A stretch of 64,000 nt of DNA from positions 10,788,001 through 10,852,000 of the forward strand of contig NW_024704755.1 of assembly GCF_018977255.1 (NCBI RefSeq). Direction: 5' to 3'. Below, piece by piece: positions 10,420 to 44,170 of this stretch. The position numbers and the translations under genes were made by a program. The DNA is from Callorhinchus milii (taxonomy: Eukaryota). The stretch's first letter is position 1; each line of letters begins with the position of its first letter. Below the pieces are notes generated by a model that did not search any database, was not told where the DNA came from, and saw only the letters and a list, made by a program, of their open reading frames with translations.

Positions 10420-10674
10420 CTCATCTGCTTGTGTGATCACAACGAATGGTATGCAGCTACTTCTGTCATCTTTTTCATCTTCAAGCAGAGCTTCCTCTGT
10501 TCCTGCCCGAGTTGATGGATCCAAAACCCACCATTCCAGCAGGTTTGCTGGAGCTTCGTCAGGGAAGTCAGTGTCAACAGATCTCTTTGAATCATCTACA
10601 AAAGCTGACAATGTCTCTTCCTCAACTCCAAATGCACCATCGCTAGCTGGTTTAAGGACAACATACTTTGTTCT
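10420..10674 (-). CDS. Sowah-like gene, coding exon 3 (255 nt, phase 0 to 0)
   Basis: Long pyrimidine tract then aatAG|. Fully open frame RTKYVVLKPASDGAFGVEEETLSAF...IPFVVITQADE, donor GAG|GTATGT. KYVVLK is the motif closing the Sowah N-terminal domain and continues directly from exon 2. Confidence 0.75.
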
Positions 10675-12179
10675 CTATTTGAAAAGAGAAAACAAAAACA
10701 TTAAAAAAAACTACACAAACAGTCATGCTTTAAACAAGAGATTATAATCCTTTTCAGTTCTGCATTCCAGTAATAAATCTTCAATAATCTGTGTTGGCTG
10801 TCATTGTAACAACCTAAGTTAGTGTCCATTTATCTAGCTTTAAATTTCTCAAATCTAAGAGGGCTACTATCTCATTTAGATGTGGTTAAGCAGCACTGTA
10901 TTGCCTTTGGATTTACTTTTTTTCTTATTACTGCATTAATATTCTTGGCTGTTCAAGTCACAATTCAAAGTCATTTAAAGAAGCCTTAATAAGACAATGA
11001 TGCTTTTACAGAAAATATCTGGTACTACTGTACAATTCTATAAAAAATAAATCTATTCACCAGAACTAAAGACAAATCTCAAACTTAGTATAATGGTGTC
11101 TGTCTGCTTGTGACTTTGAGGATTACTAACTTTATTTTGAATAAATATATTTCTTAATCCTAAAATAGATATGTAATATACATTAAAAACTGAGAGGATG
11201 ATATTTTATCGATGAGTTTTAGGTATGTTTAGAACAAAATGCAGTTGTGATTCACTCCTGGAATTCATCACTGAGCCTCACCACGAATAAGATGGATGAA
11301 TAAGATTTTTAAAAAAGTAGTTTTTACTGATATCTGACAATGCAATTTGTCATCATATGGTCTTTCACACAGCTTTCACATACCTCTGTAGGCATTCACT
11401 CCATGATAACATACCCACTGATTTATTACATTTAGTGAATGTTATAATAAATGGAATTTTACACCTACATGTGTTTGTACGCATTGCTTAATTAGAATTA
11501 ATCCCAAATTACTGGAAATTAGTTATTTTTTATGATTTACAAGTTCCAATTTACAATTTATAATTTGGGTAGAAATCCATCTGCACTGATAATATTATTT
11601 AAAATGTTAGTTTCAAAATGATCGCCATGCCTAAGAGTATCCAAACCAGACTGAGAGTTTGACATATGTCTGCCAACTATGATGGCAATTTCACTTTATC
11701 TGGAATGGGGCACACATTCTCTCCCTGGAGGGACTTAGCCCAGCTTAACTCATTCTGGAAAGTATTGGGCACAGCCTGGGGTTACCAACTGAAGCTCTGG
11801 ATTACAAATGCAGTGCCAAAATCAACATATTGTAAGCAAAAAGCAATGTAATGAGCCACATCAGTATTTAGGAATCGAGCATACATACGAGATTTGTTGT
11901 ACTAATTGCTTGGGAAGGAAAGACCGTCATGTAAATAATATAGCCCCAAGAGTCTGCCATTTTCCAACTACGGTATTCAAAGACTTTTGGTACATTTGTC
12001 TAAGCGTGACAGTGAATCCAATGAGGATGATGAAATGTAAAGCAAAAATACACCTGTTTCAGACATTTGTGTAAACCTCATTCTGAACACTTATTTAAAA
12101 ATTATATCCCTTTCAATTACAGGTATACATTAATCCACCCTTTTTAGGTTTGCATTTGCTTTATTTTTCTTCAAAAAAA

Positions 12180-12458
12180 ATAATCCTTCAAAAAAAACAA
12201 TAATAAAATCGGTCACTTCAATCCACGACTGTTTGTGGGACACTGCTGTGCGCAATTGGCTGCCAAGTTTTGCCCACAAATATACAGTCAATTCACTTTA
12301 CAGTATATTCTGTGAAACGCTTTACAACAACAACAAAATTACATGTATATAGCGCATTTCACGTCGAGAGGACGTCCCAAGGCACTGGACAGACAGTTTT
12401 TTTACAACATCTCAAAGACGTTACAAGGAGCTATATCAAATGCAAGGATTATTATTAT
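12180..12458 (+). mobile_element. SINE 3' part, interrupted by a reversed L2 3'-end fragment (about 12324-12386)
   Basis: ggtcacttcaatccacgactgtttgtgggacactgctgtgcgcaattggctgcc...atatcaaatgcaaggattattatt. The insert resembles 8433-8500. Confidence 0.85.
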
Positions 12459-15400
12459 TTTTCCAGGTTAATATTTTTGAAAACTAAGTACATTTTCTGT
12501 ACACATGCAGGTCTTATCTTCTCATTACATTTGCTTTGGCAACCTGAAGACAAAGATCGTCTTCAGTTTTAAAGCATGTTCTTGGGCTCTTTTTGCTTTT
12601 CTCATTGAAGATTTTTTTTTCTCTCAAACTATCTTTGTGATCTATTGATGAGCATTATTGATTCAAATAAGAAGGACTTTAAAATATATGGCAGAAAGTA
12701 GGATTTTCTGTGCACGTTTTTCAATCCAGACACATGAAGAATAAAAATAGAAATTAACATACTCTTTCATCTGTCTCAGAAATTTCACCAAATGTCAACA
12801 ACAATCACAAATGAATTTGGTGCATTGATTTGACACTGGGAGTCGATCTTCCTTCAGTGCATTTTCAAACTGGTTATCTTCTTCAGAGATTTTCAATTCT
12901 TTTCTTTGAAATCTGGAGATCCTGCCCAAAGGGGGATTTTTAAATGGAAAAAACACAAATTGCTACTAGTTAGACAGATATGCTGCACAGAATTGGATGA
13001 TAGAGCTCTTTTTGTTCGTATATTCAATAGTTAGCAGAGAATAGGTGAGTTTTCTCCAGTGGTTCATTTGAGCCTTTGGAGCCTTGTGATGTAACTGTTA
13101 GTCTTAGTCTCCCAGATGGAACACATCTTCCTTTTAATACTTGTAAAAAATACAAGACAATGACCAACTCCGACCAAGTCTCACTGATATATCTTACTTT
13201 TTTTAAAATCTCCGCTTTATATATCTTCATTATTTGCTGCTATGTGGCCTTTAAGATTCCATAAAATAATTTGAATCTGTTATAGTATTTGGTTTCCTTC
13301 TGGGATCACGAATAAATATTTACCTTCATGGCTGACTGCTGGCTAGGCTGAGGTCTCTTTCTAGCCTCTTAATCTCTGTTCTTCCTGGTGGACTGTCTGA
13401 TTCTAAATTACTTTATAAAGGATCAACACCATCCACGCTGACCACATGACTCCTGTCTGATGACTTCCTGGGGCTGCTTATCCTGGATGATGGTTGCTTC
13501 AGTGTGGTTGCTCTTGTTCCAGTGGCTGTCATCCATCTTTCAATTTAACCAATGTTTCTCCTGGTCTCTCCTTCACAGATCATTCTAACTCTCACTGGTC
13601 TTGGTCGGTTTGTTGCCTTTTGCAAGAGACATTTTTAATGATTTTTTTGGCTAATATGATTAAAATAATTTTGTGGATGGCAGAGGAACGTTGGTGATGA
13701 AACTAATATATTGTTTAATTGGGCATCTAGCTATTTTTAAAGCTTTTCCTATCATTATTTTTTAAGTGGAGAATAGTTTTGAGCATTAATCACTACTCTT
13801 CTTCAATTGATAACTGCTTTTCATGATAACTTTGTCACACTTCAAAATAAACACTCATTCACTTGCTTCTTCTACCAGTTACAAGCTATTACGATCATCT
13901 TCTTGAACTCAAACCAACATCTGTAATCCACCTTACTTCCGTGCAAATGTCTACTGCTGCCCTCACTTACACTCGAGATCACAGTAGGGATTCACTAAAC
14001 GAACACCAGTATCAGTTGATGCACTCAGTTCATTTGCACCTGAGCTGCATCACAATATTGCAATATACAAATCCTGATGTGCACATCTTTGTGTCAGAGA
14101 TGGCCAGATGTGCTGCACTTGAAATTTGAAGCTTGAACATCAGTTTAACTTGCACTATACTGACGTTCAAGTGATATGAAAGTGATTTCAAGCTGTGCAT
14201 CAGGGATCTGTTTTATGCTGCTTTACTGTCAGTTTTTTGCACTAAACACAGAATTCAATGCTACTTTCATAAAGTTGCAAATTTAGACCTAAATAAGCTG
14301 GTGTAAATCAATAACTGCCGAGAAAAACTGTAAATACAGTTGGAGAAATATCATTCTAATCAATTTATTTGTAGATTTTGTTTCAAAATACAAATTTATT
14401 TGTATTTTGTACGCCCATGATCACCCAGTTGAAAAATACCTTTGCTCACTTTTTCAAATTCTCCTCGTTTGATCATTCCATTTTGGACAAACAAAGGGCA
14501 TGTGAATGTTTGAGTTTCAGCTATACCATTCCTTAACTGGCCACAAGGAGGTGCCTGATAGTACTGTAGATTGGCTCGCCCGCTAATATTTTCTACTTGC
14601 CCCTGAGAGAGCCTGGCAGAGTCTCACAAGGGAAGTCCTCAAACTACCACTTCACCCCACCTGATGTCAAGTTCCCAATTCGCTGTGCAACCAGGCCATC
14701 AGGTGCTGTTTTTCTCTCAATACTGTCATAAAGAAGTACATGTCCATGGCTGAGTATTAAACAGCAAACATTCAATCTCAGACATCAAATACACTCTATA
14801 AAACACATTTGCTCTGAAAGCCAAAAAAAAACAAGGGCACAGCAAAACAATCAGATTCTAATCTGTCGTAATGGGCAATTTTTTATTAAATATTGCCAAA
14901 TTTGTGACCTTATATTTGCGTGAACGATTTCATTTACTGTCAGGAGAGTACCAAAGGGCAACTGTGTTATAATTCAAGCGTAGAGGCTGTAAAACCCAGA
15001 TGCACTAAATGTGACAATGCATTGAAAGAAGCTGGCATAAAGCAAGAGTGAAAGGTTTGTATGCTGTCACAGAGATGATCCACATACCCTAATTATGGAG
15101 GATTGCCTTCAAAAATCTGACACAAATGTTAGGCTAAATTAAATGTTGTCTAATTAACTAACGTATACAAGACTTCAAAGTATAACATTTCCATGTTGTT
15201 CAGTGACCAACGAGAACAAAAATGCCTGAGAATTATCAGTCAACACAGACTTCCAATCTCAACTGACTGTTACAAGGTTATACTGTTTCATTTCCATGAA
15301 TCTATCCCTTTACCGCACTGTTTGTACAATTTACAGAAAAAGTCAACATGGTAAACAGTTTCACACAATGAGGTGTGAAGGCTGATAGAATGGTATTCAA

Positions 15401-17322
15401 TGGCTCTGAACTCCCCTGATGAGCTGCCAGAAGTCGTTATGAATGGACCAGCTGATGGACTGATGACTGATAAAGGCAAACCAAACAGCATTGGTAATTT
15501 GAGAAAACATTTGCCACTATGACAACCGAAAGCACTGTGACAGTTGCTCAGATAGAGATTTTTGAGAAATAATATTCACCATTTATGTATTCCCTTCATA
15601 TATTTTATACTACTGTAATTATAGCTATCTCTGAAATTGCCTTGAGAGATCTGTTTGTCCTTTGGGTGTCTTTTCTGACAGTATTACTGATACTAAAGTC
15701 TTACCATTTATCTTTATGATCTGCACGAGAACTTTGCTCTAGGTAAAACAATATGACATAATTACAGTTTTTCAGTTCATATAAAGAAAATCTTTAAGGG
15801 CACTGGCTCCCACCCAGATTTTATTTTGCAATATTTAGCATACTAAATCAACAGGATTTGATGTTTTTATAAAACTAGAAACACTATACACAAGAAATAT
15901 TACATTCATTCCATATAGCAAAATGAGAAATGATATCAACTTTCTTCGTTTATGAAATATATAACCTTTTTCTGGTCTGGTTTAATGCAAGTTATCTTCA
16001 CATTTCACATGGATAAAATGTATTCAAACAAATTAGCAAGTCACTGAGGTCAGCATTTGATTGCATCTTATTAGCTATGAAAATCCTTAACAATAAATTG
16101 TATAGCAGTTATGGTTGACTTCTCTTTCTAGCATAAGGCTTCGAAATATGATTTCCATTCAGAATTTTAAATGGTAGGTTTTGTTAATTAAAGCCGATAG
16201 ATAGTGAATTAAAATTGTTTGAATAACAAACTAATTCAGATGCTACCAGCTTGAAGAATACTGAATCTTTCATTGTTAACAAACATCCATTGTATTTTCA
16301 TTGTAATCTGAGTCTAAGAAGAAATTTTGAAGGATTCCCAATATGCAGTTTGTTAAATGTTTTTTGCAGCTTGTTAAATATTATAGGGGCAATATATTGT
16401 TTGAAACAGACATGTATGTTGACATTTTTAACTACAGTTAAGCACAACCAGGTTGGTTAGAATACAAGTATCTGCGATAGTTCTGCAAGTGTGCTTTAAA
16501 TATATCCAAGACATCATATTGTGTCCAAACCAAATACTGTTCTACAGTTAATTTAGTGAATGAATCCCCCAGAGTCTTCAGCTATCTACTACTACAGCTC
16601 ATTAGAGCCCAATATCCGACTTTTCGTGTTATATCAGTGAAAGCACTTATGCTCAAAATGCAATTAATCCTAAAACAAACAAGATCTTTTTGACATCTAT
16701 GTTTTTACTGACAACATCAAGAACTGATGTTGAGTTAGTTGGTGGGAGCTTCATGTTTCGGGCACTTAAGACAAGACATTTGGTCAACTGTTTAGCCTTC
16801 ATGCAATTAGAAATCTTAGTATTTTTGGTAATGCATTACATTTGGGGATTAAACTTGCAGATCTCTTACCAGCAAATGATGTGGTAAAGCTTGCCATCCA
16901 ATGAAATGTCTTATTGAAATAGCCCTGACTATTTCTCTTGTCACAGCTGTCGTTACAGCCATTTGCACTTACAGTAAATCCCTTTCATTACTGAAATAGA
17001 AATTTGTGTCTTAGTACTGCTACATTACTAATGCTAAATATTTAATTCCCTAGTGTGCTAATTATGGTTGAGTACTGGCAACACTGATTCTAGTTTTTAA
17101 TAACTAACAGCAATATGAGCATTTTTCAATTAATTAAACACAATGTACGAGTAACCTCTTGTCATTTTGCCCTCTAGGACCTTGACTAATTTATGCTGGA
17201 TAAAACATTTTCAAATCAACTGTTACTACATAACATTTCCTGGTCTTTCAATACATGGCTTTACTTTTTTTTATCTCTTAAAATAAAACTGGATGTTTTA
17301 GAAAAGTAGACATAAAATTGAA

Positions 17323-17520
17323 AATAATAATAACCTTGCATTTGATACAGCGCCTTTCACACGGGGAAGATGTCTCAAGGTGCTTCACAGGATTTACTGT
17401 AAAGTGTATTTTGTCGGCAAACATGGCAGCCACTTTGTGCACAGCATTGTCCCACAAACAGCCATGAATGAATGACCAGTTTTATCTGGGCTATTGTTGG
17501 CTAGGACCCTGGGAGGGATT
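17323..17520 (-). mobile_element. SINE fragment (same family)
   Basis: aataataataaccttgcatttgatacagcgcc...gtcccacaaacagccatg. Confidence 0.8.
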
Positions 17521-19132
17521 CCACAATGACAACAAGAAGGAAAATAACAATTTGGACAGACCAAGGAAAAATTAATTAGAAAAACAACAGGATAGGATTG
17601 GTTTTATTTGAATTATTAGAGTTGAAGTAATTAACCAGATGCATAGGCTTGTGCGTTAGAGTGCAAATCACTTTCTTGGTAGATTTGATAGCTGTAACTG
17701 GCAAAATAAGTGCTCTATTCAATCATGGTTAAACATTGATGCAGACTGACCTACAGTGCAGTGTTCAAATGCTGCCTTCCAACACAATTCTGATGGATAC
17801 AAATTTAAAAACACAGCTCCTGACCTGATCTTTAACAAATTTCAATGCAAGCCAGCTTTTTGGAATGAGCATGTTAAATTAGCACTTCCAAAATGGAATC
17901 AGTTCACACATCCCACAGAGCACTGCAACACATGTTGTTTGGGGAATATGTGGTGATTCAAGTGTGTGCATGGCATACCTCAACTGTTACACAAACTGCA
18001 TGTGGTTTGAGGTACCATTCTTGCTCAAATCAATGCCTCTGAAAGAGAGCTCTATGAATAGAATGGAGATTGAAAATGAAGTCTGGAGATTCAAACAAAG
18101 TGGACTGAAATTCAAACATTGTGTTCATGGCACCAGACACGTCATGTTTGCACAAGGAGATGTTCACATGTAATTACATTTTTAAAATTATGCATATATA
18201 TTATGTTATTTTATTTTTCCATTTTTATTTCCTTTCAGTTTCATACTCTGCCAAACCATCCTGTTTCAGTCAAACTGACTATGCGGCCTGAACTATGGCA
18301 AAATCAGTGCTGTAGCTACTTCCATCAACCTAACAGGAAGTCAAATCCCCAGTGCGAGATACGTCTCTGTTGTGTCCTCCTATGGTGGGTTAAGCATTTA
18401 ACTATAACAAAGCACTATACTTAAAAAAAAGCTGAAACACAGTAACATTTGCCTCAAAACAAGAACCACATTTTGAAAATTTATCAGGCTGCGACTCATT
18501 CTCTGGCTGGGCATGTGTACCCTAATCAATGTTTTAAAATATATTTTATTAGATCTCATTTTGGACCTAAATCTATCATAATAAACCGTTCCCACATTAA
18601 ATATTTACCCATTTATTGATGGACCTAATAACTGAATAGTCTTACGGCTGCAGTGTAAACTTCACAAACAGAAGATTACAGTTTTGGGGTACAGTAATTC
18701 TCTGCTCAAATCTGCTCCTCACCAAAGAGCTTTTTGAGGAACTGCTACATGGAATTCATCAATACAAACTGCAGAGAATTATGATGAATTTAACAACATT
18801 GTGCGTTTTTGTCTATTTCTGTTGTTTTTCTGTTTTGAGGGGGGGGAAAAAACTTTGATACCCATTCAATATAATAGTAGCCAGTTGATAATAGACCTGT
18901 TGTTTCCATTATTCCAAGTGGGTCTTATAGAAAACTCAATATGGTGGTCTCAATGAGACTGGTTTAGACTGCTTCAATGCAAAATATGCTCTTTCACATT
19001 GGGACAATGTAATCATTTAAATTCAAGCTTTCTTTCAATCAGTTTATTCTGGATTGCTCAGCTCATCTTTAATCCTATATTTGAGCAAATCATAAGTCAC
19101 TGACTGAAGGCAATTCAAAGACAATTAAAATA

Positions 19133-19210
19133 AAATAATAATAATAATCCTTGCATTTTATATAGTGCCTTATCATGTCATTTGAGACATTTCAAAGCGC
19201 TTCTCAGGGT
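19133..19210 (-). mobile_element. SINE/L2 3' tail fragment
   Basis: (aat)n ccttgcatttatatagtgccttatcatg...caaagcgcttc. Confidence 0.75.
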
Positions 19211-20510
19211 GCAAGTGTAAAAATTATTTGTTCTAAACAGTAAGAGTATCATATCTGGATAAATAATTTGATGATGTTTACCTTGACAACAGTACCTTTT
19301 TTGCTTTAAACTATCTTATTAGTAGATTCCATGTTATTTTTCTCATTAACATTTGAAAGGTTTTCAATGCAAATCTGCTCAATAGAATAATTACTGGATC
19401 TACATTTACCCAAACTGGATTTTCTTAGGTGAGAAAGTGACAGCTGGTTGATTGGCTGACAACACACCATTGTTGTGAGTACTGATCAGTGCATGTAGTC
19501 CTTCAGGAATTCTAAGCTTTGAGGAATAAGAAATATACACTTCAAATCGGTTGCTAAAGGAAAATGTTAGAATGGCAGCTTCTGTTCAGAAATAAAAACC
19601 CTTAATTAGAATTTCTGCACTGCTGGTTCAACATGTTATATCTCTGCAATAAAAATGGGCATTTTATGATATATTGGAAACCTAATCACACTTAACTGCA
19701 GAAAAGTGAGCTTAGAAAATCTATGTTAAACAGAGTATATGAAAGAGAAAGAATAAACCTAATAGAGAAGAACACACAAGGTTAATGTTGTTTTCTATAT
19801 TTTGTATCTGATTAACCGATTAAAATGCTGCTCCTCATAGCACCTCTGGCTTGCTTTTTCTACACTGATCAAATTCAAAACTGTTCCAGAGACCGACAAA
19901 TCCCTCTGAGTGAAGCTGCCTGTGTTTTCTTAACTGGCTGTTTCCAAAATAGTAAGAGACAGCTTAGCTTTTCACATCTATAAAATTCTATAGCATTGCT
20001 GAAAGAAGAGGAAGCACAAGTCAAACCACCTCGTGTTAAGCTGTGAAAAGCAAACCTTTAGTGGAGTAATTACACGCAACACTGCTCTACAACAGATTTG
20101 TTAGAGTTGCCTGTTAATGTAAATATGGCTGAGCTTAACATTATTTCTACTAATACAGTACTTTATAATTCTACTCTTTGGAGAGTGGGTTGCTTGTTAA
20201 TGAATAATGTTTGCATTAGGCACCACCCATCCACCAGTAAATAACCCTCCCAATCATTTGATGCAATGTGCCTTTAAATTTATGTTGACAATCTCCACTA
20301 AAACCTAATCAATTTCCTTTTGATGTTCTTACCGAGCTCTCTTTCTAATGACATACGTTCAGCCACAGTAACTATTTGTAACACAGATGTTTCGATATGT
20401 AAACAACAAATAATTACAAAGAATAGATTTGGTGATGATACTGGGAAAATATCCGGTACAAATAGACCATAAAATGGACCTTTGTTATACAGAACCTCTG
20501 TTGATTTATA

Positions 20511-20622
20511 AATAAATAATCCTTACATTTGATACAGTAATTCGCTTTTCATATCAGGAGGACATCTCAAAATACTTCACAGAATATAATGGAAAGTGTA
20601 GTGACTGTATTTTGTAGGCAAA
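20511..20622 (-). mobile_element. SINE 3' fragment
   Basis: aataataatccttacatttgatacag...gacatctcaaaatacttcacagaata. Confidence 0.7.
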
Positions 20623-20914
20623 TTATAGTACTGAACTTATGACAGTACTTAACTGCTATGCTACATTAAGTTAAGCGTCATCAAATATTTTTATTTCAGA
20701 AAGAATCAAGTATCAATAAAGACTGAAAAACTATGGCAATCCTGAATATTGAGTCACATTCAATTTTAATATGATTTTGGTGAAACAACTGACCTCTCAC
20801 TGATAAACATTTAAAGCTTCCAAACTAAATGTTCAGGAATCTCACCAAACATTTTAGGATTCACACAAAATCTTTCAGTCGGAAGGGCCATTGGTACACA
20901 AACGTTAATAATGT

Positions 20915-21025
20915 AAATAATAATAATAATCCTTGCATTTGAAATCATGTCATTGAGATGTCTCAAAGCACTTCACAGAATATACTGTAAATATAGTGGA
21001 TTGACTGTATTTTGTAGGTGAAAAT
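20915..21025 (-). mobile_element. SINE 3' fragment
   Basis: (aat)n ccttgcatttg...tctcaaagcacttcacagaatatactgtaaa. Confidence 0.75.
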
Positions 21026-32500: not shown

Positions 32501-32607
32501 AACTTCTGATATGGAAGTTTAATTGTTTTGGGTGGAAATAGTTTCTGGAGTGCTGGTTTCGACTTGCTAAATATTTAAATATACAAACAATATAATTTGG
32601 GGGTACA

Positions 32608-33069: not shown

Positions 33070-33470
33070 AACTGGAGATCAGGCTTCTGCCTAGTAATGT
33101 GGAAGCGCTACTTCACACAGAGGGTGGTGGACATTTGGAGCAGGCTCCCAAATGAAGCTATCTATGCAAGAGTGCGTTAGACAGATTATTCAGGGAAGAG
33201 CGGATCGGCATATATAGACAGGGAGCCTGAATGTGCAGTAACAGTGGTGTGACAGAATACAGCATTGATTAAATAAACTCTTGTGTTGCTAGGGTCTCAG
33301 GCCTCCCTTAAAGAGTTTGCTCACCTATCTTCAGGATTCGTGGAGAAATTTTCCAGAATAACTCCCCACCGCATATCAGCCTTGGGATTTCTTGGTTTTC
33401 TCTTTATATCTTTTTCTGGAAAGGTGGGGTGGGCGAGGAAGAGATGACACCCGGGTGACCAATAAACAAT
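33070..33470 (+). mobile_element. CR1-type LINE 3' relic
   Basis: tacttcacacagagggtggtggacatttggagcaggctccca encodes YFTQRVVDIWSRLP, matching the CR1 ORF2 C-terminal motif FF..RVV..WN.LP. Confidence 0.7.
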
Positions 33471-36400
33471 AAAGATAGTCCAAGTATTGGGTGGGAAGTC
33501 GAATGGAAAAGTTCTCCTAAACTTTTCTGCTGTTTCCTTTCTACGTGACTATGTAATTAGAATGCACATCTTCAACTTGTTAATGAACAAATCAGATAAT
33601 ATTGTGTTTGGACAAGTGCCTTATGTTTGAAGTAAACTGATCAGAAATGTATGTCATAATTTGAAGATTCCACAATTATTTGAAAGCTTGTAGTATACTA
33701 AAACAATTAGAAAAAAGTGATTATAAAAGGTGAGTTGATATTGTGCAAACCTTTGCAATTTTTCGATACACTTTGCAAATTTTGCAATAAAATAAATGAG
33801 ACATATGGCCCACCAAAAGTGCAATTGCTTCCCAGCAGTTAGCACACTATAATGGCACTTTTCCAATAGCTACTTTTCTTTCACTTAAACTAATAAAAAA
33901 AACTTTTGGAGTCTAATCCCATGAGTCAATGTAAGTCAGAAAAGCACTTTACTTAATTAAAAATTTTAAGTCATTAGCAGACTTACTTTCAGCCTGTAAT
34001 AATATTCAAGATGCAAGGATTTCAAGCTTATTATATATTGTAGCAATTATTAATTGGCACCTTGAATTCCATGTATAATTAAAAAAAATTCAATAACGAC
34101 TAGACTCACTTTGCTGATGAAACAGTACATAGATTTTTTTTCCCGTTTCATCAGCAACACTAAGTTTACAGCACTACCCAATCTGGTTACAATATAAAAA
34201 TAAAACAGATGTTGGATTTGATAAACTGAATATTTAAAATGTGTGAACAAAATGTCATTGAAAACACTTATAAATAATTGGAATGAACAAAGTTAGTCAG
34301 TGTAACTTACCAAATAAATGAGAACCAAATCATATGAATATTAATTATTTTTTAAAATAATATTTTGCCAGGTTTCCTCTCAATCCTTACAAATTAAATA
34401 ACATATTACTATTAATGTGAAATAGTGTCAAAGCCACAGGTTGGGTGAACATTGTAAATGTATTCTTCCATCCCAAATGTAAACCTTTCATTTGATCATG
34501 GCTTTTAAAACAGATTGTGACATTTCAATGAACTCGCATAAAACAGCGACATATGTAACAGCCTTTTTGAGACTTTCTCTGATGAAGATCCCCTGTTAAA
34601 CAAACAAGATTGCTCGTCTCATGGTATTAACAAATGGCACACACGTAGAGATAGCACATCTTTAATTCTCCATCACTGCCTCGGAGTGACCATTTTAAAA
34701 CAATAGTCAGGTACAAAACCTTAATGGTTGCCTACAATTTCAAATCAACCAGGTACGAGATTCTGACGTAGACATATTCTAAGTAGAATTTTTTTTTCCT
34801 TCAGCTTCCAAAAATCGTATTCAATATCGTTTACTATGAATGCACCTGTTGCGCTAAGATGATCACCCAAGAATGTCAAAATATATGTTATCCCCACAAA
34901 TATCAGTGCGATATGACAAGCCTCAGTTTATTCCACAAGAATGACACACACGTTTTCCTAGTCTGCTCTGTATGTATAAGAATAATACTTGCATTTGATA
35001 CAGTGTCATATCAGGTCAAGATGTGTAGGTGTTGACAGTCAACCCCACCAACACTGTGCCTCAGCATCAGGCACTGTCAAGCGCTCTGACATGCTACCCT
35101 GCATAAAGGCACTATATAACAAGATATATAAATACAAGTTGTTGTTATCGTCTCATAAAGCTTTACACGATATACCGCAGAAGTGGTACAACTGTATTTG
35201 TATCCGAAAGTACAATTCTCACATCATATAGATAGGTTATGCTATTTATACTATGATTTTGTTCCTATTAACATTTTTCATGCTTTTTCATTTCTTTTGC
35301 ATATAATTTGCGTTGATAACTGTATTGATAGTGTTTTAAAGTAACTGTTGAAACAAGGCAATTGCCCATTGAAGACTATGCTACCAGTTAGTAATAGTAA
35401 TCCTTGCATTACCAGTTAGTGTTTTGACATCTAGCCCCCTCAAGTCTCCATTGGATCACCACAGACCTGACTGGTTTTGTCAAGTGTCTCTCCTTAAGGC
35501 CAGTTGAATCCAAGGAAAATTCTGCTTACCTCACTTCTCCCACCAGATATTTTAAACCTTGCACTCATTTTATCATCCTAGAAAGGGTGAAAGGGTGAGT
35601 TACAGTATATTCAAACCAAGAAACTTCCAGCTCAACTTCGTTACCTGGGTTATGTAATATGATCAATTTGGTAGAATTGGACTGTCTTCAGTACCAGCTG
35701 AACAAACAAAGCAGGGAGCAGGTCAATTCCCATCTCAAAAAGAAGACATGGAGAAAAAAAGGTTGTGCTGAAGAGATCAAAGAGTTCCATGTAAAAAAAA
35801 TCATCATCATCATCAAAGGTACACGATCCCTGAGGGAGGGTTCGGGGGACTGTGAATTGATATGGACCAAGCTCATCCGGAGACATTGTCATTTTTATGA
35901 ATTTCTAAATGAAATTTACATTAGTCAGTGACCTGGTCCGTAAGAAGATTACAATTGGTTTGATGTTTTCGTGAATAGGCCTGAACTCATTGCGTTCGGA
36001 CCTCAATTTCTTGTTAATCAATCATTGGTTTCTGGGAATCTAACTGGAGTGACACTGTAATTTTCAAGACCGAGTTGTACCCTACTTTTTAAATAAAAAT
36101 GTTATCTCCATTTTTCCAAATTGTGTTTACTATTTTCGTTACTAAGATTAAGGTAATTCATATTTTGAAGGGGAGAATAAGAAGTATAAAGAAAAGTATT
36201 ATTAATGGGACCAAAACGTTGAAGTCCTCAGTTCTACAAAATATGTATAACTAGGTGTCTTCCATGATGTATATAGAGTTTTAATATGCTTGTATCATTA
36301 GAAAGCTAAAAAACAGCCTACAAATATTTTGTAACTCCAAAATAAAATGACAAAAAGAACACAGGACAATATAAAAATCTTTATAAATATAGATGTCTTT

Positions 36401-37164
36401 ATTTGTGAATTGTAAATTTTAAACAGTGCTTAACGTCTTCACTATTACAATATGTAGCATAAAACATCCTAAACTATTAAAAATGGATAAAAGACCATTT
36501 TTAGCACTGATAGCACTGGTTCTCAAGTCTTGTGAAACCCAACCAATGAAATTGTTGAAGTCATGCACTCAGATTTTAATGGATGGAGAGAAACATTCCC
36601 TGCATATTCCGGGAATTTAAGAGACATAATTCCACGTCATGGATATTTTTGTTAAAATAAATTCACAAACAGAATGGGGATTTGGCTAAACATGAACACA
36701 CTTCAAATTTTTTTTAAAAAACTTTCTTCCAACAATACGTTCAAAGAGTTACAGCCAATATCTCTGCCTTCATGACATACTCCGACATTTGTTCATGCTG
36801 TTAATTAATATAATCACGAACACCTGTTTAGATATTCTACATCTAACCACCGTTATCAATCATAATCCATTTTATATTTAAATATACAGTAAATGATATG
36901 ACAATAATAATCTTGCTTCTACATAATAATGTCAATACATTTAAACAGGTTGTAAAGCAAACTAAGCTGGAAGATTTTCAACCAAAACTGTGAACTGAAA
37001 TTAATATAATTAAAAAACACTCAATGCTCTAATATTAATTGAAATGCAACATGGAGTTTTTGATTGAGTCACATAACAGCCCACCAAAATGTATTTTTGT
37101 AAATACTGTTAAGAGTATATACATGAATCTTACACCCACAAATAGACATAAGCCAAAAATATTA

Positions 37165-37398
37165 CAAGAACATAAGAATTTGCGAGGCGAAAGAAGACCA
37201 AGGTCCACCTAGTCGCCTTCCACTAACCTGGAAGTCGCTTGACATGTTGTGTCCCAAACTATATACAATAACTTGTATTTATTTAGTGCCCTTCATGTTA
37301 GGTAGCGTCTTGGAGCACTTAAACTGTATCCCAAGATATTATTTTCCAGCAGAAATCTATCTAATTTGTTCTTGAAACAAACGACATTTCTGCTTCCA
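37165..37398 (-). mobile_element. CR1-type LINE 3' end
   Basis: The minus strand reads CFKNKLDRFLLENNILGY, then a 3' UTR ending ggaccttggtcttctttcgcc...attcttatgttcttgt. Confidence 0.65.
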
Positions 37399-38324
37399 TT
37401 ATTATTATTATTATTATTATCGTATATATAATAATAACTTTTTACATTTTGATAATTGGATTTGTTCCAAAACCTGAAATAAATGACTGGATCTGAAAAG
37501 ATCAAAGAATCGCAGATTTGATCAAAGAACTAGAGTAAATACAGCTAATCCAAGAAGAGTTTTCACTATTCTTGATGAGTCGTTCATTTAATCCATTGAT
37601 CTTTTATAGCCAAAATGCATTTACAAAATGTTTGTGGAACTAATCTTTGACAATGAATCAGTGCGATAAAGTTAGGATAAAATTAAATAAATGTCAGACA
37701 AGTTAAGATGAAGTATATTTAGCATGATGGATATCCTATAGTGATTACAAGGTAGTAATCCCATTAACAGGTTTAGATGATGTCATAACCACAAGAGTGG
37801 AGCTCAAGCATTTGACAACCGTCATTTGAACCCCGCAACAAGATTACAACCTTGAAGTCATTTCCATGCATCTATTAGTTTAAAGTTGAATTTCACAAGA
37901 TAAAGGGGTGCCTTAGTTCTATTTTTTTCGTCACAGTGGATATTACAGCAGATAGCAAGGCCCATAGCATTTCACATAGTTTGATGATGGTTACACTGTT
38001 GTGATAATACCACTACCAGTTTATTGAGTGATAACCAAAAATTAATCACTGCAATATATGCTTAATGGACTTGTTCATTTAAGGTTTTGATGGAAAAATA
38101 TCATCAAGCTCACATTTTTCTACTTAAATACTGTTTACTGAAATGTAGCTGTTAATTTATGTTTCATTCATTTCAATGGCACATTTAAATTTTCAACATA
38201 ATTTACAAATATTTAATCATTAAATGCCTTCTGCTAAACCCATCTTCTCAATTTAAATCTCATAAATTGCAAACATTAATTATTTTCTTAATACCAACAA
38301 TTTCCTGTGTTGACATTCAGTGCA

Positions 38325-38612
38325 TAACTGGAGAATTGCAATGTTGGAGGTGCCATCCCTCAGATCATACATTAAACTGTACCAGCCTGTTCAGGTGGAT
38401 GCTAAAGAACTCACTGCACTATTCAAAAAGAGGGATTCTTCTTGTGTCCTGGGCAATAATCCTTCAAAGAAAGTGGTCACTCACTTCCTGGCTGTTTGTA
38501 GAACCTTTTGTATGCAAACTGTCTGTTGTATTTGCTTAAACATACACAATCACTGCTTTGGATAGCAGTTACCTGTACAGCACTTTGAGAAACTGGGATT
38601 TTACCAGCACTA
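38325..38612 (+). mobile_element. Deu-domain SINE relic
   Basis: ggaggtgccatccctcagatcatacattaaac...gcctgttcaggtggatgctaaagaac...gcactattcaaaaagaggga...gcactatatcaaatgcaa, homologous to 25470-25778. Confidence 0.7.
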
Positions 38613-40132
38613 TATCAAATGCAATGGTTATTGTTTGGATAATTATTATTGCCTTAGGGAATAAGGGGAAAATCTACTCAACCCTAGAAAAGCTTTGACC
38701 ACGGACTTTTGTACTTTTCCTGAAGATTTGATCTTTTGGATACTTTTAGTTAGAGTAATGCAGGTTCATATCCTTTATATAGTGGTTTGTATGGCTATCT
38801 GTAATGAGTATGTGGACCACTTGGGGCTAATTAATATCCTATAGCCAGTAGGGGCTACTTGTAATCGATAGGCAGCTCATTGAGATAAAGGCATTCTTTC
38901 TGTCTAATAGTGTCTACTATAGCTGTGATTTGAGGTCAGATTTGGGTTTTAAAAATATGAACTGGTTCCACCCTTACCCTTCTGCACCAGTCAGTGGTAT
39001 TAACTGTACCTATAATTTGTCATTTCTCTAGTTAGGATGTCCAGTTACTAATTTTGACATGTAACTGAGAGGTAGGAACCCTGAAAGAAGCATTGAATAT
39101 CAAAGTCTATGTACTTAGATTGTCTGCAAAAGAGCAATATGTGAACTGTTTCCCAAGGAAGCCATTTTTTCACCCATCACTACACAAACATACCCACAAA
39201 CAGATCCATCTCCAGCTAAACCACACATGTACAAATTATATAGGAAGTAGAAGAGACATCCTTAAAGAGTTGTTTTCAATCCCAACAAAAATATGGATGA
39301 CAACTCATTCCATTAAACCCTTAGTTAGTTCAAAATGTAGTGTTGTAGTACCAAACTTGGACAATTCATAAAAGTTATGAAAAATATTGTAACTGTCTCT
39401 TTGACCTTTAGTTTTCTATTATGTGCTGTAAATTATATGTAATTATCTATTTTCTGACTGACAAACAGGAAACAGAAGTCATAATTTGGGAAGAGATTTA
39501 GGCTGTTACTGCAGTACCCAAAACCACAACTCTTTAATCAAACTATACAAGCTGTTATTTCAAAATTATAAAGAACTCTGAAAACGTAAAATCACTACTG
39601 TACAACAAAATATTCTTCCAAACAGAATTTTGGTTATTGTTCTTAAGAAAAGCAAAATTACAGTTTCATCATTCCAGAGTTACCAATAATAATGCAAAAA
39701 GATTTTTAAAAATGTAGTAATTAAGATTTCAATAGGTACTGTATTTACAAAGTTGATTAATTATTTTTTGTAAATCAAGTATGTCTTTAGAGATGTGTTT
39801 TTGATTCCTGAAAGAGTCTCTAATCACTTTGTGATGGAATTTATTCCAAATTATAACTTAATAGTTGTTTGCATTTAAATATGAATCCTTAAAATACTGT
39901 AAGTATTGGTAACACTATAATATTGTATACTGTAAATGCTTCCAGTACTGTGTAATGTAACAATGATGTTCAAATGCTAGGAAACCTCAATAACAAAGTT
40001 TATCCTCAAAAGTCAAAATAGGATGTTGACATGTTGGGAGTACATCTTTAAATAAAAACACATAAAATAAATATCAATGTAGCAAAAACACTATTCTCAT
40101 TGATCAACTTATAAAGTTTATATTGCAACAGA

Positions 40133-40194
40133 ATGTTTATTTACATTTGTTTATGCTTATTTACATTTGTTTATGTTTATTTACATTTGTTTAC
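40133..40194. repeat. Three tandem copies of a 20 bp unit ATGTTTATTTACATTTGTTT
   Basis: Read directly from the sequence; copy 2 has one substitution. Confidence 0.9.
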
Positions 40195-40443
40195 CAAAGC
40201 TATACTGTATTTTCAAAACAAATTATACCATGAAGGAAATAGACAAATATGGGGTCACAAATCCACTGCAGCAGCTGTTTTTGGTGACCTATAAATAACA
40301 TACATTTTAGTTTTAGAGGGATGCTAATAATTTTTTTCAAGGCTGTAGGTTAGCTATTCACACAATACTGCAGACTTGTTAAAACAAAAATTATAATTTG
40401 ATAACTTGCTTATATTGAACATAAATTAACGGAACAGCCTTAC

Positions 40444-40505
40444 CTCTTCTTCTGTGATAAAACCAACTTTTGAAAGGATATCTTGGAACTGTTTTCGGTT
40501 TCTAT
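40444..40505 (-). CDS. Sowah-like gene, coding exon 2 (62 nt, phase 1 to 0)
   Basis: Acceptor cttatttttAG and donor GAG|GTAAGG. Joined to exon 1 it reads DRNRKQFQDILSKVGFITEEE, matching the Sowah pattern r.nR..Fk..vn.va.v..ee. Confidence 0.78.
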
Positions 40506-42549
40506 CTAAAAATAAGATATTAAAAAAATGTTTATTTTATTAAAAAGCTTTCATTGCCAGGAGGATATATGGCAAAGATATTATTTATTGGTTTAATGAT
40601 AACTAAGGTACTGATAGAACAGTTCAGCCTAGACTGTTTTATTTTTTAACCATCATGCATCCTCCTTTAGCCAGGCTAGGATGGTCTGGACCTTGGTCCA
40701 TGTTCATCAAAGCGATTATCCTACAGGAGGTGCGAGCCAAGTATGTCAGTCTTAACGCCCACCCCAGCCCCGTCCAAGATGGAGTATCTTGCCATAGCAC
40801 GGGGCTCCATCTACTGTAGCAGTCCCGCCAAGAAATGATGAAGTTCACTCCAAACAGTGGCAGGCAAACTTGACTGGCAGACACAACTGGCACTCCAACC
40901 TACGACTATCTGTTTGTGAGGCAAATACTTTACCACCTGTGCTAGCAGGAACCCTAATAACTATACATCGTTGTTTACAGAATTCCAAGATTTTAAAGGT
41001 GCAATTGAACAAGTATAAACATGAGATTAAAAACATTATGATTTCTAGAGGGAAACATCATTTCATTAAAATGTTATCAATGTTGATATCAATGGATGTT
41101 TAAAGTGTTACTGATATGCGCCTATAATCTAAGCAGAGAGACTGGAAATAAAGGCATGATGTTACTTAGAGAATACATTTCAGTGGGAAAAGAAAAGGCT
41201 TCCATTTCTGTTAACTCTTACCTTTAGGCAAAGATGAAATTGAAACAGTAGTCACACCAATATCCACTTCTAACTAGAAAACATCCTTATTATTTGAGTG
41301 TTGCAACAATTGTTGCTCATTTTACAATTTGGGACAGATTTATTTTTTAAAAATACACCCTGGCTATACAAAACAAATCACAACCATTGACAACAGACTT
41401 TTTTTCATTTTTAAAGTTATTTTTCCCAATCCATTATCCAGGACTAAAACAACCTGAGAATCAAAGTGACTGCGTCCAAACAATTATAGCGATCCACAAG
41501 ACTAAAAGAATACTAAAAAATTTAATTTGAATGTGTAGCTTGTACATTAATTTGTTCAGTGATTTTCTATGTGATGTGGAAATTTTGATTTTCTTAAATA
41601 GGTAATCTAAACGTTACTACATAATGACTGCAGTATTATACTGAGTTATATAATTATCTTTAAAAGATAATAAATCTCAATAACATTATCTAAAGATAAT
41701 ATGAGAGATTATATAATATATTTTATTAAAAAAACATATTGTGCCAAAATAATTTGTCCCAGCTCATCAATGTGTAAAGTTAGTGTTAAAGTTTTGGAAG
41801 AATACACATATTGCTGATTAATGCCAATCATATCTATCCATTTTGTCATGTTTGTCTTGCAAAAATTAATTCACTAGAAACTGTGTGACTCATTGCAAAT
41901 CTGCATTATTTTACATAAATTTAAGCTTTGTATAATGGTAGGAGCAGACATTTTTGCATCACAGGTTTTCTAATTGAACAGTTAAATGCAACTCTCAATG
42001 CCCAAAGCACAAATGGATCTATACTATAACAGAGTTCATATAATTCATAGTTTTAATATTTAAAAATATTAAATACTCAAAGTAAATATTTAACAGATGA
42101 AGTAGCAATAGCTAATTATTGATACACCTCAGTACAAGTTTCAGATTTAGAAAATACAAATATTAATATAGCTCTTACATTGCCAATATACAAATTAATA
42201 TGCAACTATAATGCTACAGTATTTATTTTGGATATTTCTAAATATTCAACTGATTATTAGCAAAATATGCAACACCATGATGTCCACCAAATACTTTGCA
42301 TTTCTATTGCAACGGTAATAAAACTAGGTTTGTTCTGTTTGACAAGTTCTGCTGTGAGTATTTGCCTGAAAAATAAAAATTGCAGACACGGATATAGCAG
42401 AATTGAACTACAGTAATTCAATACACCCGTTGACCAACTTTATACAGACGTGTTGCGTTCTCTGGAATTACGATTTTTTTGAAAAAAATTCTTTTTTTTA
42501 AAAAAAAAGTCGAAACAGAAATGTGACTCGACAGCAATCAAAACCACTG

Positions 42550-44170
42550 CGTAAAGAACGAGAGAAGTCTGTCGATGCCGAATAATGAAAGTGGTGCTGA
42601 AGAGGGTCGGTCGGTCGGTCGGCTTCACGCTTGAAGCCAACATGTGGCCCCCCAAATCAGCTTCGTATCAAGGGTTACAAAACAAGGAGCAAGTTTCCGC
42701 TGGCGGCCCTGAAGCCCGAGCGAAACCAGCAGCAGTTTTCGCAGTTACTTTTGCGTCCAAACAAAATCACAGACAGACAGCTTCAATATAATCCGTCTCT
42801 CTCTCTCTCTCTCTCTCTGTGTCTTGTCTGTTCTTGTTTATATATACTGTATATACTGTGTGTGTGTGTGTATATATGTGTGTACCCACACACGCACAGG
42901 TATGTTTCACGCTGTTCTTTCTCATTGCGTCTGAAATAAAAATAAATAAAATGAAAATGCAAAAAAGCGGAGAGAACTCCCGTTGGCGCGCGGCTGCAAC
43001 CCTCCCGAATTCGGAATAAAGAGAGAGAGAGAGAGAGAGAGTAAAATGAACGATTGATTGATTGATTGATTAATTAATTCAGTGTCCGTTTGCCTTCCCT
43101 GGTCTCACAGCCTAACTTGTGGTTGCGGGCGCTGGTTTGGTGTGCTGATGTTGTTCTCGAAGAAGAAGAAGAAGAAGAAGAAAAGAAGGTAATAAAAATA
43201 AAAGGAACACAAAAAACGGGACGAGTTCGAAGCCTCCGGGTTAAGCCCAGGGATTATGATTTTTTTTAAGAAAAAATAAACCAACAAACAAACAAACCCC
43301 TAAACGACGCGACGACAGCGGCAGTCACCCACTTCACTGACTGACTTACCCCTGGCGTCTGGCGCGGCCTGGAACAGAACCGTCTCAAACATGTTGACCA
43401 GCTCTGCATATTTTATCTTGCCCCCTCTGTCGTGGAGCAGAGCGAGAATAAAATCCACCTTCAGCTCCTGCGATGCCGCCGAGGTCATCCTCCTCCTCCT
43501 TTCCTTTCCTTTGCCGCGTCTCCTCCTACTCCTCTACCCGCCGCCGCCTCCCCTCCACCACCACCACCACCAGCTCACGCCGCACTTCCGGTCGCCAGCC
43601 CCGTTACCCTGACAACGACGCAGCCCGCGGCAGCTCGCTCCGTCACCGCGTTACCATATGCAAATGAGGCAGCCGGACCCCTCGCCAATCCACGGTGACA
43701 AAGAGGGAGAGGGGAAGGGGTGGGGGGGAAATGGTGGGCGGCGCGCTGCACCTCGGGACGTGGAGTTCTTCGCTTGCGTTGAACACCCCCCCCCGACCAC
43801 CGCCAGGTTCGAGGGCGGGAGGGGAGCAGAGACTACATCTCCCAGGGTGCCCGGCGCCACCGCCCTCCTGCCGCCGTCCATTACGCCCAGGCTGTCCAGG
43901 CAACGGCGTGTATGGCCGGTGATCGGCGGTGTGCGCTCGGGGCAGTTGCAGCACCTTCTCGGAGGACGCGCCGCAGCAGCGGCTTCCAGCTCAGCCTGCG
44001 AGAGGGAGAGAAAGAAAAAGTTTATATCAGAAAATACTTCAAGGCATTTGCGTTCATCTGCCTAACATCAAGCGCGAGGGAGAGGGCGGCGGCGGCGGTG
44101 GTGGGGTGGGGGGGTGTTAATACTTAAGGTGGTATCGATATGGGTCGATTGGTGAGGTAAACCTTTACCG
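42550..44170. promoter_or_regulatory. CpG island / promoter of the Sowah-like gene
   Basis: Sharp rise in GC and CpG against an AT-rich background. Contains an ETS-like CCGGAAGT (minus strand, 43584-43591), an RFX X-box-like GTTACCCTGACAAC (43603-43616), an octamer ATGCAAAT (43658-43665) and a CCAAT at about 43685. Confidence 0.75.
43350..43488 (-). CDS. Sowah (sosondowah ankyrin repeat family)-like gene, coding exon 1
   Basis: MTSAASQELKVDFILALLHDRGGKIKYAELVNMFETVLFQAAPDAR resembles the Sowah N-terminal motif (E..il.fl..rGGkv.n.eL...F...l). Good Kozak context aggATGa, inside a CpG island, with a strong donor AGG G|GTAAGT (phase 1). Confidence 0.8.

What the first reader, a model, noticed from the sequence alone, without database searches (positions are those of the whole stretch)
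10420..43488. Hidden intron-containing Sowah-like gene head-to-head with Irx5, at the position of human CRNDE
Seen in the sequence: three short minus-strand exons (43488-43350, 40505-40444, 10674-10420) with canonical splice sites and matching phases (1, then 0). They splice into a stop-free 152-codon frame: MTSAASQELKVDFILALLHDRGGKIKYAELVNMFETVLFQAAPDAR-DRNRKQFQDILSKVGFITEEE-RTKYVVLK... Established knowledge: this pattern is the N-terminal domain of Sowah/ANKRD43-family proteins. Intron-rich Sowah is the ancestral bystander gene of the bilaterian Irx regulatory block. Tetrapods kept intronless Sowah copies elsewhere, and the human gene divergent from IRX5 is the lncRNA CRNDE. Inference: this lineage still carries the IrxB-linked Sowah paralogue with an open 5' frame, so it may represent the coding ancestor of the CRNDE locus.
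Basis: partly seen in the sequence, partly recalled or inferred. Interest (0 to 1): 0.9.

Follow-up and report, generated by a model that had tools for sequence, protein, structure and literature searches.

The report
Known shark Sowah gene beside Irx5
The three short exons are the start of an already annotated, expressed Sowah-family gene lying head-to-head with Irx5 in the elephant shark, so the gene itself is ordinary, and its possible link to the human CRNDE RNA remains untested.

Summary
The three minus-strand exons (43488-43350, 40505-40444, 10674-10420) have GT/AG borders and phases 1 then 0. They are spliced exactly as predicted in assembled contigs of public runs: junction 43350|40505 in 4 of 4 runs, junction 40444|10674 in 2 of 4.

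The gene is not hidden. The 152 codons equal the first 152 residues of eight database isoforms of Callorhinchus milii LOC103176098, named "SOWAHC-like". These proteins carry the SOWAHA-C winged-helix domain plus ankyrin repeats. Exons 4 onward lie outside the window.

The neighbour at 50437-53212 (+) is IRX-5a. Iroquois-Sowah linkage outside tetrapods is published (Maeso et al. 2012, seen only through citing papers), so the finding is already known. The scan also noted an Irx-Sowah block on another piece of this genome.

The CRNDE-ancestor idea is supported by position and orientation only. I could not test it, and I found no paper making the link.

One new lead: predicted proteins of at least three named turtle species contain an open orthologue of exon 3 that ends at the same boundary.

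The parts
43350..43488 (-). Coding part of exon 1 (46 codons plus 1 nt). It encodes the first half of the Sowah winged-helix domain. The 5' UTR extends at least to 43559.
   Evidence: for the sequence; contigs cover 43350-43559 (X4), -43546 (X6), -43500 (X1) and -43493 (X2); 100% identity to residues 1-46 of P0001 and P0002.
43534..43536 (-). In-frame TAG upstream of the start codon. It lies within the transcribed 5' UTR.
   Evidence: the open frame begins at 43533. The X4 contig reaches 43559.
40506..43349 (-). Intron 1, 2,844 nt, phase 1, GT..AG.
   Evidence: joint 40505/43350 in 4 of 4 runs. for the splice sites.
40444..40505 (-). Exon 2, 62 nt (residues 47-67). It encodes the long helix of the winged-helix domain.
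10675..40443 (-). Intron 2, 29,769 nt, phase 0. Presumed host of Irx enhancers (inferred, not tested).
   Evidence: loose end at 40444 equals 10645-10674. All 8 of 8 database isoforms skip it.
10420..10674 (-). Exon 3, 255 nt (residues 68-152). It encodes the wing strand of the domain and then an acidic disordered stretch ending in a motif conserved from chimaera to turtles.
   Evidence: tblastn of the Caretta protein P0176 against the window hits 10671-10315, E 2.7e-16.
1..10419 (-). Start of intron 3 (phase 0). No further exon of the gene was found here, so exons 4 onward, including the ankyrin repeats, lie beyond the window.
   Evidence: tblastn of P0001 and P0002, residues 153 onward: only chance-level hits, E 0.25 or more. 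Open-frame listing.
50437..53212 (+). Irx5 gene (IRX-5a). Coding exons are 50437-50673, 51273-51678 and 52302-53212.
   Evidence: P0048 is 100% identical and the best hits carry IRX-5 names; these exon borders reproduce P0048.
44401..45392 (.). G-rich tandem array with a 26-27 nt unit (about 35-37 copies) in the 6.9 kb between the two start codons.

Best explanation
The three exons are the 5' coding exons of the annotated, expressed, intron-containing Sowah-family gene of the elephant shark, Callorhinchus milii LOC103176098 (named 'SOWAHC-like'). The gene is transcribed divergently from irx5. Exons 1, 2 and the first codons of exon 3 encode the SOWAHA-C winged helix-turn-helix domain. The rest of exon 3 encodes an acidic, disordered linker. 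Exons outside the window add the ankyrin repeats. The gene belongs to a Sowah lineage found here only in non-tetrapod jawed vertebrates among full-length proteins. It is the 'bystander' gene of the ancient Iroquois-Sowah regulatory block. Its very long introns (29.8 kb and more than 10.4 kb here) run from irx5 into the gene-poor flank, where Irx enhancers are expected. Shown: exon structure, splicing, coding identity, domain, neighbour. Inferred: the bystander/enhancer-host role, and any relation to CRNDE.
For: Splicing: junction in 4 of 4 runs; second junction in 2 of 4 runs. Identity: P0001 and P0002, 100% over residues 1-46; tblastn of 8 of 8 isoforms: exon 2 and exon 3 stretches at 100%, exon 1 hit at 85% over residues 1-55 because it runs on into the intron; accessions and names. 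Domain: precomputed PF25877.1 on P0001, P0002, P0006 and P0007. A profile built from 9 fish paralogues hits the database protein P0001 at residues 10-75 with 31.8 bits, conditional E 4e-11. The AlphaFold model has pLDDT 90-97 over residues 11-70 of a helix-strand-helix-helix-helix-hairpin topology (elements 11-74), and a confident ankyrin region at about residues 220-340. Ank families pass the Pfam cut-offs on P0002. Neighbour: IRX-5a on the same 18,121,395-bp contig. Lineage: a clade of 13 rows (support 100/99) joins this gene with gar, eels and acanthomorph teleosts; bird SOWAHC and the reptile Sowah-like proteins fall in the other clade. Literature: the Iroquois-Sowah block is conserved across bilaterians except tetrapods (passages read).
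Against: Each exon searched alone is not significant. Pfam found nothing. The paralogue profile gave E 0.25 for exon 1 and 0.89 for exon 2, and a + strand frame at 35702-35791 scored slightly better, E 0.1. The local Pfam copy did not report PF25877 even on the full database proteins, so that domain call rests on the precomputed list, my own profile and the model. The runs are only guessed to be RNA. The ankyrin exons and Irx3 were not seen, because they lie outside the window. No enhancer was tested.
Confidence: 0.93

Rival explanations
1. Extension by the first reader: this gene is the still-coding form of the locus that became the lncRNA CRNDE in tetrapods. Under this reading the promoter and the transcription unit divergent from IRX5 were kept, and the coding exons decayed after retrogene replacement.
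For: Same side and orientation relative to Irx5. PMC6868825 (passages) says CRNDE is divergent from IRX5 at 2 kb in human and 1.2 kb in chicken, is multi-exonic, and was found by synteny in the 7 tetrapods studied but not in zebrafish. No tetrapod full-length protein falls in this gene's clade. Predicted turtle proteins still hold an open exon-3 orthologue. PMC5803294 (passage) says pseudogenised Sowah remnants lie next to the tetrapod Iroquois locus. PMC3509318 (passage) describes a 200-300 nt vertebrate-conserved element in CRNDE intron 4 that behaves like an alternative exon; exon 3 here is 255 nt. That is only a size coincidence so far.
Against: No sequence comparison with any CRNDE locus was made. 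The start codons here are 6.9 kb apart, not 1-2 kb. Divergent lncRNAs arise readily at CpG-island promoters of developmental genes without any coding ancestor. The conserved CRNDE intronic elements may simply be Irx enhancers.
Confidence: 0.35
3. It is the direct orthologue of tetrapod SOWAHC, as the RefSeq name suggests, and not a separate Irx-linked lineage.
For: RefSeq and UniRef names for the shark, gar and several teleost proteins are 'SOWAHC' or 'SOWAHC-like'.
Against: In the tree, the three bird SOWAHC rows sit in the other main clade; the split has 100/99 support. The orthologue profile scores bird SOWAHC at E about 1e-5 against 1e-17 for the turtle exon relics. The caveat is sampling: tetrapod SOWAHA, SOWAHB and SOWAHD under those names were not in the tree, the root is a midpoint only, and 32 rows were used.
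Confidence: 0.1
4. Chance open frames with chance splice sites.
For: Each exon alone gives no significant family hit.
Against: Exact spliced contigs, identical database proteins, and orthologues at 72% (sevengill shark) and 45% (gar, bowfin) identity.
Confidence: 0.005

Closest known systems
Iroquois-Sowah genomic regulatory block (Maeso et al. 2012, Genome Res 22:642; known to me only through citing papers and recall)
   Same: An intron-rich Sowah gene is physically linked to an Irx gene, with very long introns next to it. Citing papers state that the block is conserved across bilaterians except tetrapods and that Irx regulatory regions lie in Sowah introns.
   Different: Nothing differs that I can show. 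I recall that the paper's abstract names elephant shark data, but the paper is not held, so I cannot say whether this exact Irx5-adjacent copy is figured there.
RefSeq gene LOC103176098 of Callorhinchus milii (XP_007887669.1, XP_007887671.1, XP_007887673.1, XP_007887675.1, XP_007887676.1 and others; UniProt A0A4W3JWP8, A0A4W3KBW3)
   Same: tblastn maps the first 152 residues of all 8 isoforms seen onto the three exons (exon 2 and 3 stretches at 100%; exon 1 at 100% by phmmer for P0001 and P0002).
   Different: None. This is the same gene, and the window holds only its first three coding exons.
CRNDE, the lncRNA divergent from IRX5 in tetrapods
   Same: Same side and orientation relative to Irx5. 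Both are multi-exon units running away from Irx5 (for CRNDE; for this gene).
   Different: CRNDE is regarded as non-coding, with poorly conserved exons. This gene codes for a conserved winged-helix/ankyrin protein. Homology of any sequence was not tested.
lncRNAs that are fossils of lost protein-coding genes (Hezroni et al. 2017, PMC5577775)
   Different: The main text of that paper has no occurrence of CRNDE, IRX5, Irx, Sowah or ankyrin.
Tetrapod intronless SOWAH genes (bird SOWAHC sampled here)
   Same: Same architecture: N-terminal PF25877 domain, disordered middle, ankyrin repeats.
   Different: They fall in a different clade. They share about 28-30% identity in the N-terminal part and 45% in the ankyrin part. 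Per the citing papers they are intronless and unlinked to Irx.

Membership tests
Sowah (sosondowah ankyrin repeat) family | N-terminal SOWAHA-C winged helix-turn-helix domain (PF25877) | tested here: met
   Precomputed PF25877.1 is listed on database proteins P0001, P0002, P0006 and P0007, whose first 152 residues are these exons. A profile of 9 fish paralogues hits P0001 residues 10-75 with 31.8 bits. The model shows a winged-helix topology with pLDDT 90-97 over residues 11-70. Searched exon by exon the feature is not significant, and the local Pfam copy did not list PF25877.
Sowah (sosondowah ankyrin repeat) family | C-terminal ankyrin repeats | tested here: met
   Ank, Ank_2, Ank_3, Ank_4 and Ank_5 score above their cut-offs on P0002, and that region of P0185 is modelled confidently. 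The encoding exons are outside the window.
Sowah (sosondowah ankyrin repeat) family | Full-length similarity to named SOWAH proteins | tested here: met
   Fish SOWAHA/B/C-named proteins align from about residue 4-23 to residue 297 at 24-28% identity, with E-values from 1e-28 to 3e-10 in the search.
Ancestral Irx-linked, intron-containing Sowah (Iroquois-Sowah block) | Physical linkage to an Iroquois gene | tested here: met
   The Irx5 start codon is 6,948 nt from the Sowah start codon on the opposite strand. Both proteins are on record from the same 18,121,395-bp contig.
Ancestral Irx-linked, intron-containing Sowah (Iroquois-Sowah block) | Introns in the coding region (not a retrogene) | tested here: met
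   Two introns are removed in contigs, and a third donor follows exon 3.
Ancestral Irx-linked, intron-containing Sowah (Iroquois-Sowah block) | Irx enhancers inside the Sowah introns | not testable with these tools
   No vertebrate genome collection or reporter data were at hand. The 29.8 kb intron was not compared with other species.
Ancestral Irx-linked, intron-containing Sowah (Iroquois-Sowah block) | Intron positions and phases shared with amphioxus, Drosophila and teleost Sowah | not tested
   No genomic loci of those genes could be fetched. The only indirect hint is that three turtle models diverge right after the residues that end exon 3.
CRNDE locus (orthology or ancestry) | Transcription unit divergent from IRX5, running away from it | tested here: met
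   for this gene. Passages of PMC6868825 for CRNDE.
CRNDE locus (orthology or ancestry) | Sequence homology of the promoter, exons or conserved elements (gVC-In1/In4) with Sowah exons | not tested
   No tetrapod genomic sequence was available. Comparison with human sequence was not mine to make.
CRNDE locus (orthology or ancestry) | Relics of Sowah exons at the IRX5 flank of tetrapods | tested here: inconclusive
   An open exon-3 orthologue exists in predicted proteins of Platysternon, Lepidochelys and Caretta and in one unnamed MetaClust entry (E 1e-16 to 1e-18). Their genomic position could not be read.

The most novel reading that the evidence does not exclude
Tetrapod CRNDE is the transcribed fossil of this IrxB-linked Sowah gene. 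Under this reading the promoter divergent from IRX5 and the long transcription unit survived retrogene replacement. Turtles would still carry an open copy of the 255-nt exon 3 inside that unit. The 200-300 nt vertebrate-conserved, exon-like element in CRNDE intron 4 (gVC-In4) could be the relic of that exon. I found no paper stating this (searches; for PMC5577775). Maeso et al. 2012 and all supplements were unreadable to me.
Probability: 0.35. Interest if true: 0.6.

Novelty: already known. Interest (0 to 1): 0.3.

Why it matters
The gene itself adds nothing new. It is annotated, and it exemplifies a published case of deep synteny kept by regulatory constraint.

What could matter is the link to CRNDE, one of the most studied cancer-associated lncRNAs, whose origin and conserved intronic elements are unexplained. 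If CRNDE is the remnant of the Irx5-linked Sowah gene, it would join XIST-type cases of lncRNAs born from dead coding genes. Its conserved pieces could then be read either as old exons or as Irx enhancers.

The turtle exon-3 relic found here makes that question directly testable with a simple genome look-up.

Tried and rejected
Pfam on each exon alone gave only chance-level rows.

A winged-helix profile built from 9 fish paralogues, run against all 2,877 open frames of the window, ranked exon 1 second (E 0.25) and exon 2 third (E 0.89). An unrelated + strand frame at 35702-35791 ranked first (E 0.1). So exon-wise detection fails.

The protein atlas gave only generic bacterial HTH look-alikes at 0.90 or lower for exon 1.

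I looked for exons 4 onward in 1-10419 by open frames and by tblastn and found none. I therefore reject the idea of decayed 3' exons inside the window.

The idea of cassette exons in the 30 kb intron (note s1-906185) has no support. None of the 8 database isoforms includes one, and the X2 and X4 contigs join exon 2 directly to exon 3. Rare isoforms cannot be excluded.

A look-up of turtle IRX5 clusters returned only Carettochelys and Pelodiscus, so no same-contig test was possible. The only same-contig hint is Anguilla: its Sowah fragment P0022 and its irx-5-like protein P0053 both list a longest contig of 49,213,541 bp.

Maeso et al. 2012 is not held. Rfam at gathering scores found only a tRNA-like SINE head.

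Not done:
- Joining the three exons into one peptide for a search.
- Any comparison with human CRNDE.
- Comparison of intron positions with amphioxus, Drosophila or teleosts.
- A fold search of the model.

Full report
OBSERVATION. On the minus strand the window holds an ATG at 43488 followed by 139 nt up to a GTAAGT donor. Then comes a 62-nt exon (40505-40444) between TTTTTAG and GTAAGG. Then comes a 255-nt exon (10674-10420) between AAATAG and GTATGT. The lengths give intron phases 1, 0 and 0 and 152 codons in all. An in-frame TAG lies 45 nt upstream of the ATG, with no other ATG between them.

TRANSCRIPT EVIDENCE. One search for sequencing runs listed 14 runs of one coded organism, 12 of them holding part of 40300-43700 and 8 of these guessed to be RNA. 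I laid four of those eight (X1, X2, X4, X6; two studies) on 40200-43900. In 4 of 4 runs one contig joins 43350 to 40505, skipping 2,844 nt with GT..AG ends on the minus strand. In 2 of 4 runs (X2, X4) the contig continues beyond 40444 into letters that do not lie on the laid stretch. The 30-letter consensus occurs once in the window, at 10645-10674, ending exactly at the first base of exon 3. The contigs reach upstream to 43559, so the in-frame stop is in the 5' UTR. Lower-depth contigs also cover parts of intron 1 in X1 and X2, which could be pre-mRNA or DNA. Two caveats apply: the runs are only guessed to be RNA, and contigs cannot give strand or level.

IDENTITY. As required, I searched the model exon by exon and did not join the exons. 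A phmmer search with exon 1 alone against 1.84 billion representatives gave 5 hits at E 0.001 or better. Two of them were 100% identical over residues 1-46, and the other three were unrelated repeat proteins. The two are Callorhinchus milii XP_007887676.1 (LOC103176098 isoform X6) and XP_007887673.1 ('ankyrin repeat domain-containing protein SOWAHC-like'). Further look-ups gave isoforms X1, X2, X4 and X5 and two UniProt entries. In tblastn, all 8 isoforms match the exon 2 and exon 3 stretches at 100%. The exon 1 hit reads 85% over residues 1-55 because the alignment runs on past the donor into the intron. Residues 153 onward find only chance-level matches, E 0.25 or more. So the window holds the first three coding exons of a public, annotated gene. 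Its remaining exons, including the ankyrin repeats, lie beyond position 1.

FAMILY. Exon by exon the family signal is too weak. Pfam found nothing. My own profile of the N-terminal 85 residues of nine fish SOWAH paralogues gave E 0.25 for exon 1 and 0.89 for exon 2 among 2,877 frames, with a chance frame on the other strand ranked above them. On the database proteins the signal is clear:
- The precomputed Pfam list gives PF25877.1, which UniRef names 'SOWAHA-C winged helix-turn-helix domain'.
- The same nine-paralogue profile hits residues 10-75 of P0001 with 31.8 bits, conditional E 4e-11.
- Ankyrin families pass their cut-offs on P0002.
- An AlphaFold model of isoform X1 (22-row alignment; mean pLDDT 67) is confident (90-97) over residues 11-70, within a fold of helix 11-20, strand 24-26, helices 27-33, 35-39 and 43-60, and hairpin 61-66/69-74. 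It is also confident over about 220-340 (ankyrin repeats), and disordered between them.

The local Pfam copy did not list PF25877 even for the full proteins. The winged-helix domain is thus split over exon 1, exon 2 and the first nine or so codons of exon 3.

NEIGHBOUR. The + strand gene at 50437-53212 is IRX-5a of C. milii. P0048 is 100% identical, and nearly all of the listed hits carry IRX-5 names; the few named IRX-2 come far down the list. The exon borders 50437-50673, 51273-51678 and 52302-53212 reproduce P0048. The two start codons are 6,948 nt apart, head to head. A 1-kb G-rich 26-27-nt tandem array lies between them, and CpG-rich sequence lies around the Sowah start.

RELATIVES. Orthologues by similarity:
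- Sevengill shark: 72% identity over residues 1-255.
- Bowfin and gar: 45%.
- Sturgeon, eels, arowana and several acanthomorph teleosts.

In a maximum-likelihood tree of 32 proteins, the shark gene groups with gar, eels and acanthomorphs (13 rows, support 100/99). Bird SOWAHC, four reptile Sowah-like proteins and the other fish SOWAH proteins form the other side. The root is a midpoint only, and tetrapod proteins named SOWAHA, SOWAHB or SOWAHD proper were not sampled. 'SOWAHC-like' is therefore a similarity label, and the gene belongs to a lineage without full-length tetrapod members in this sample.

A profile of four orthologues also found three short predicted proteins at E 1e-16 to 1e-18: Platysternon, Lepidochelys and one unnamed MetaClust entry. 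A Caretta member shares the Lepidochelys cluster. Bird SOWAHC scored only 1e-5 in the same search. These proteins match exon 3 only, over its whole length (46-49% identity to the shark), and the models diverge from one another right after the residues that end exon 3. The Caretta protein hits the window at 10671-10315 by tblastn, E 2.7e-16. So a tetrapod group keeps an open orthologue of this exon. Where it lies in turtle genomes I could not see.

WHAT IS KNOWN. Passages in citing papers state that Iroquois and Sowah are linked across bilaterians, and that Irx regulatory regions lie in Sowah introns. They also state that in tetrapods the parental Sowah was pseudogenised and replaced by a retrogene, with Irx regulatory modules remaining in the remnants (PMC5803294; PMC8793726; PMC5585340; PMC3342872; PMC12311624). 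The primary paper, Maeso et al. 2012, is not held. From recall only, its abstract names teleost and elephant shark data. Its author list includes the elephant shark genome group, and the shark Irx5 protein has an older GenBank accession, AEW46996.1. The gene and its linkage are therefore already known.

CRNDE. PMC6868825 (passages) describes CRNDE as divergent from IRX5 at 2 kb in human and 1.2 kb in chicken. It found CRNDE by synteny in all seven tetrapods studied but not in zebrafish. PMC3509318 (abstract and passages) reports that the CRNDE exons are poorly conserved. It also reports that two intronic elements are conserved, one of them (200-300 nt) as far as Xenopus and zebrafish, and that this one behaves like an alternative exon.

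Searches for CRNDE with Sowah (one paper, a gene list, seen in the listing only), for CRNDE/IRX5/synteny and for Sowah/lncRNA/Irx (three gene-list papers) found no statement of the idea. PMC5577775 has no occurrence of the relevant words in its main text. Supplements were closed and may hold such a listing.

MECHANISM. Shown: a spliced mRNA, starting about 7 kb from irx5 on the other strand, that encodes a winged-helix domain, then an acidic disordered linker ending in a motif invariant from chimaera to bowfin, then ankyrin repeats. Inferred from the literature: the gene is held next to irx5 because its long introns carry Irx enhancers, which is the bystander role. The biochemical role of the protein was not addressed here.

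VERDICT. The CRNDE-ancestor reading is open, at about one chance in three.

Noticed in passing
Proteins P0170, P0171, P0172, P0176 (turtles); they match window 10315-10671 (-): Short predicted turtle proteins contain an open orthologue of exon 3 only: Platysternon (mis-named dolichyldiphosphatase 1), Lepidochelys kempii, Caretta caretta and one MetaClust entry. The match ends at the same boundary as exon 3. This may be a surviving piece of the Irx-linked Sowah gene in a tetrapod.
   Followed up: partly
window 10420-10480 (-); proteins P0008-P0011, P0022, P0023, P0168: The last roughly 20 codons of exon 3 (an acidic run, then a Cys/Ser-Ile-Pro stretch, ending ...ITQADE) are nearly invariant from chimaera to eels and turtles, although they sit in a predicted disordered region. 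This looks like an unexplained short linear motif.
   Followed up: partly
Proteins P0001, P0008, P0009, P0010: Several annotated products of this gene lineage stop before the ankyrin repeats: shark isoform X6, sevengill shark, gar and bowfin. A conserved short isoform of winged helix plus linker may exist, or these models are truncated.
   Followed up: no
window 44401-45392: A roughly 1-kb tandem array of a G-rich 26-27 nt unit (about 35-37 copies, about 80% matches) lies between the Sowah and Irx5 promoters. It produces long spurious ORFs in both strands.
   Followed up: partly
window 3524-3580 (-), with look-alike copies near 3279-3545, 12270-12572 and 63673-63996: A tRNA-like match (Rfam RF00005, 45 bits) sits beside a repeated element whose translations recur three times in the window. 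This is probably a tRNA-derived SINE family.
   Followed up: no
window 8300-9080: A GC-richer block with overlapping 150-230 aa open frames on the minus strand looks like an interspersed-repeat insertion inside intron 3.
   Followed up: no
window 42282-42787 and 42788-43215: Contigs of X1 and X2 inside intron 1 break with loose ends at 42489-42507, and the reads tool skipped 42788-43215 as repeat. There may be a repeat or a structural difference between the individuals sequenced.
   Followed up: no
None of the 8 database isoforms includes one, and the X2 and X4 contigs join exon 2 directly to exon 3.
   Followed up: partly
Pfam searches: The local Pfam-A scan did not return PF25877 for proteins whose precomputed annotation lists PF25877.1. 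The local copy seems to predate or lack that model, so a blank there says nothing about the Sowah winged-helix domain.
   Followed up: no
window 31803: A single N sits in intron 2. I left it untouched.
   Followed up: no
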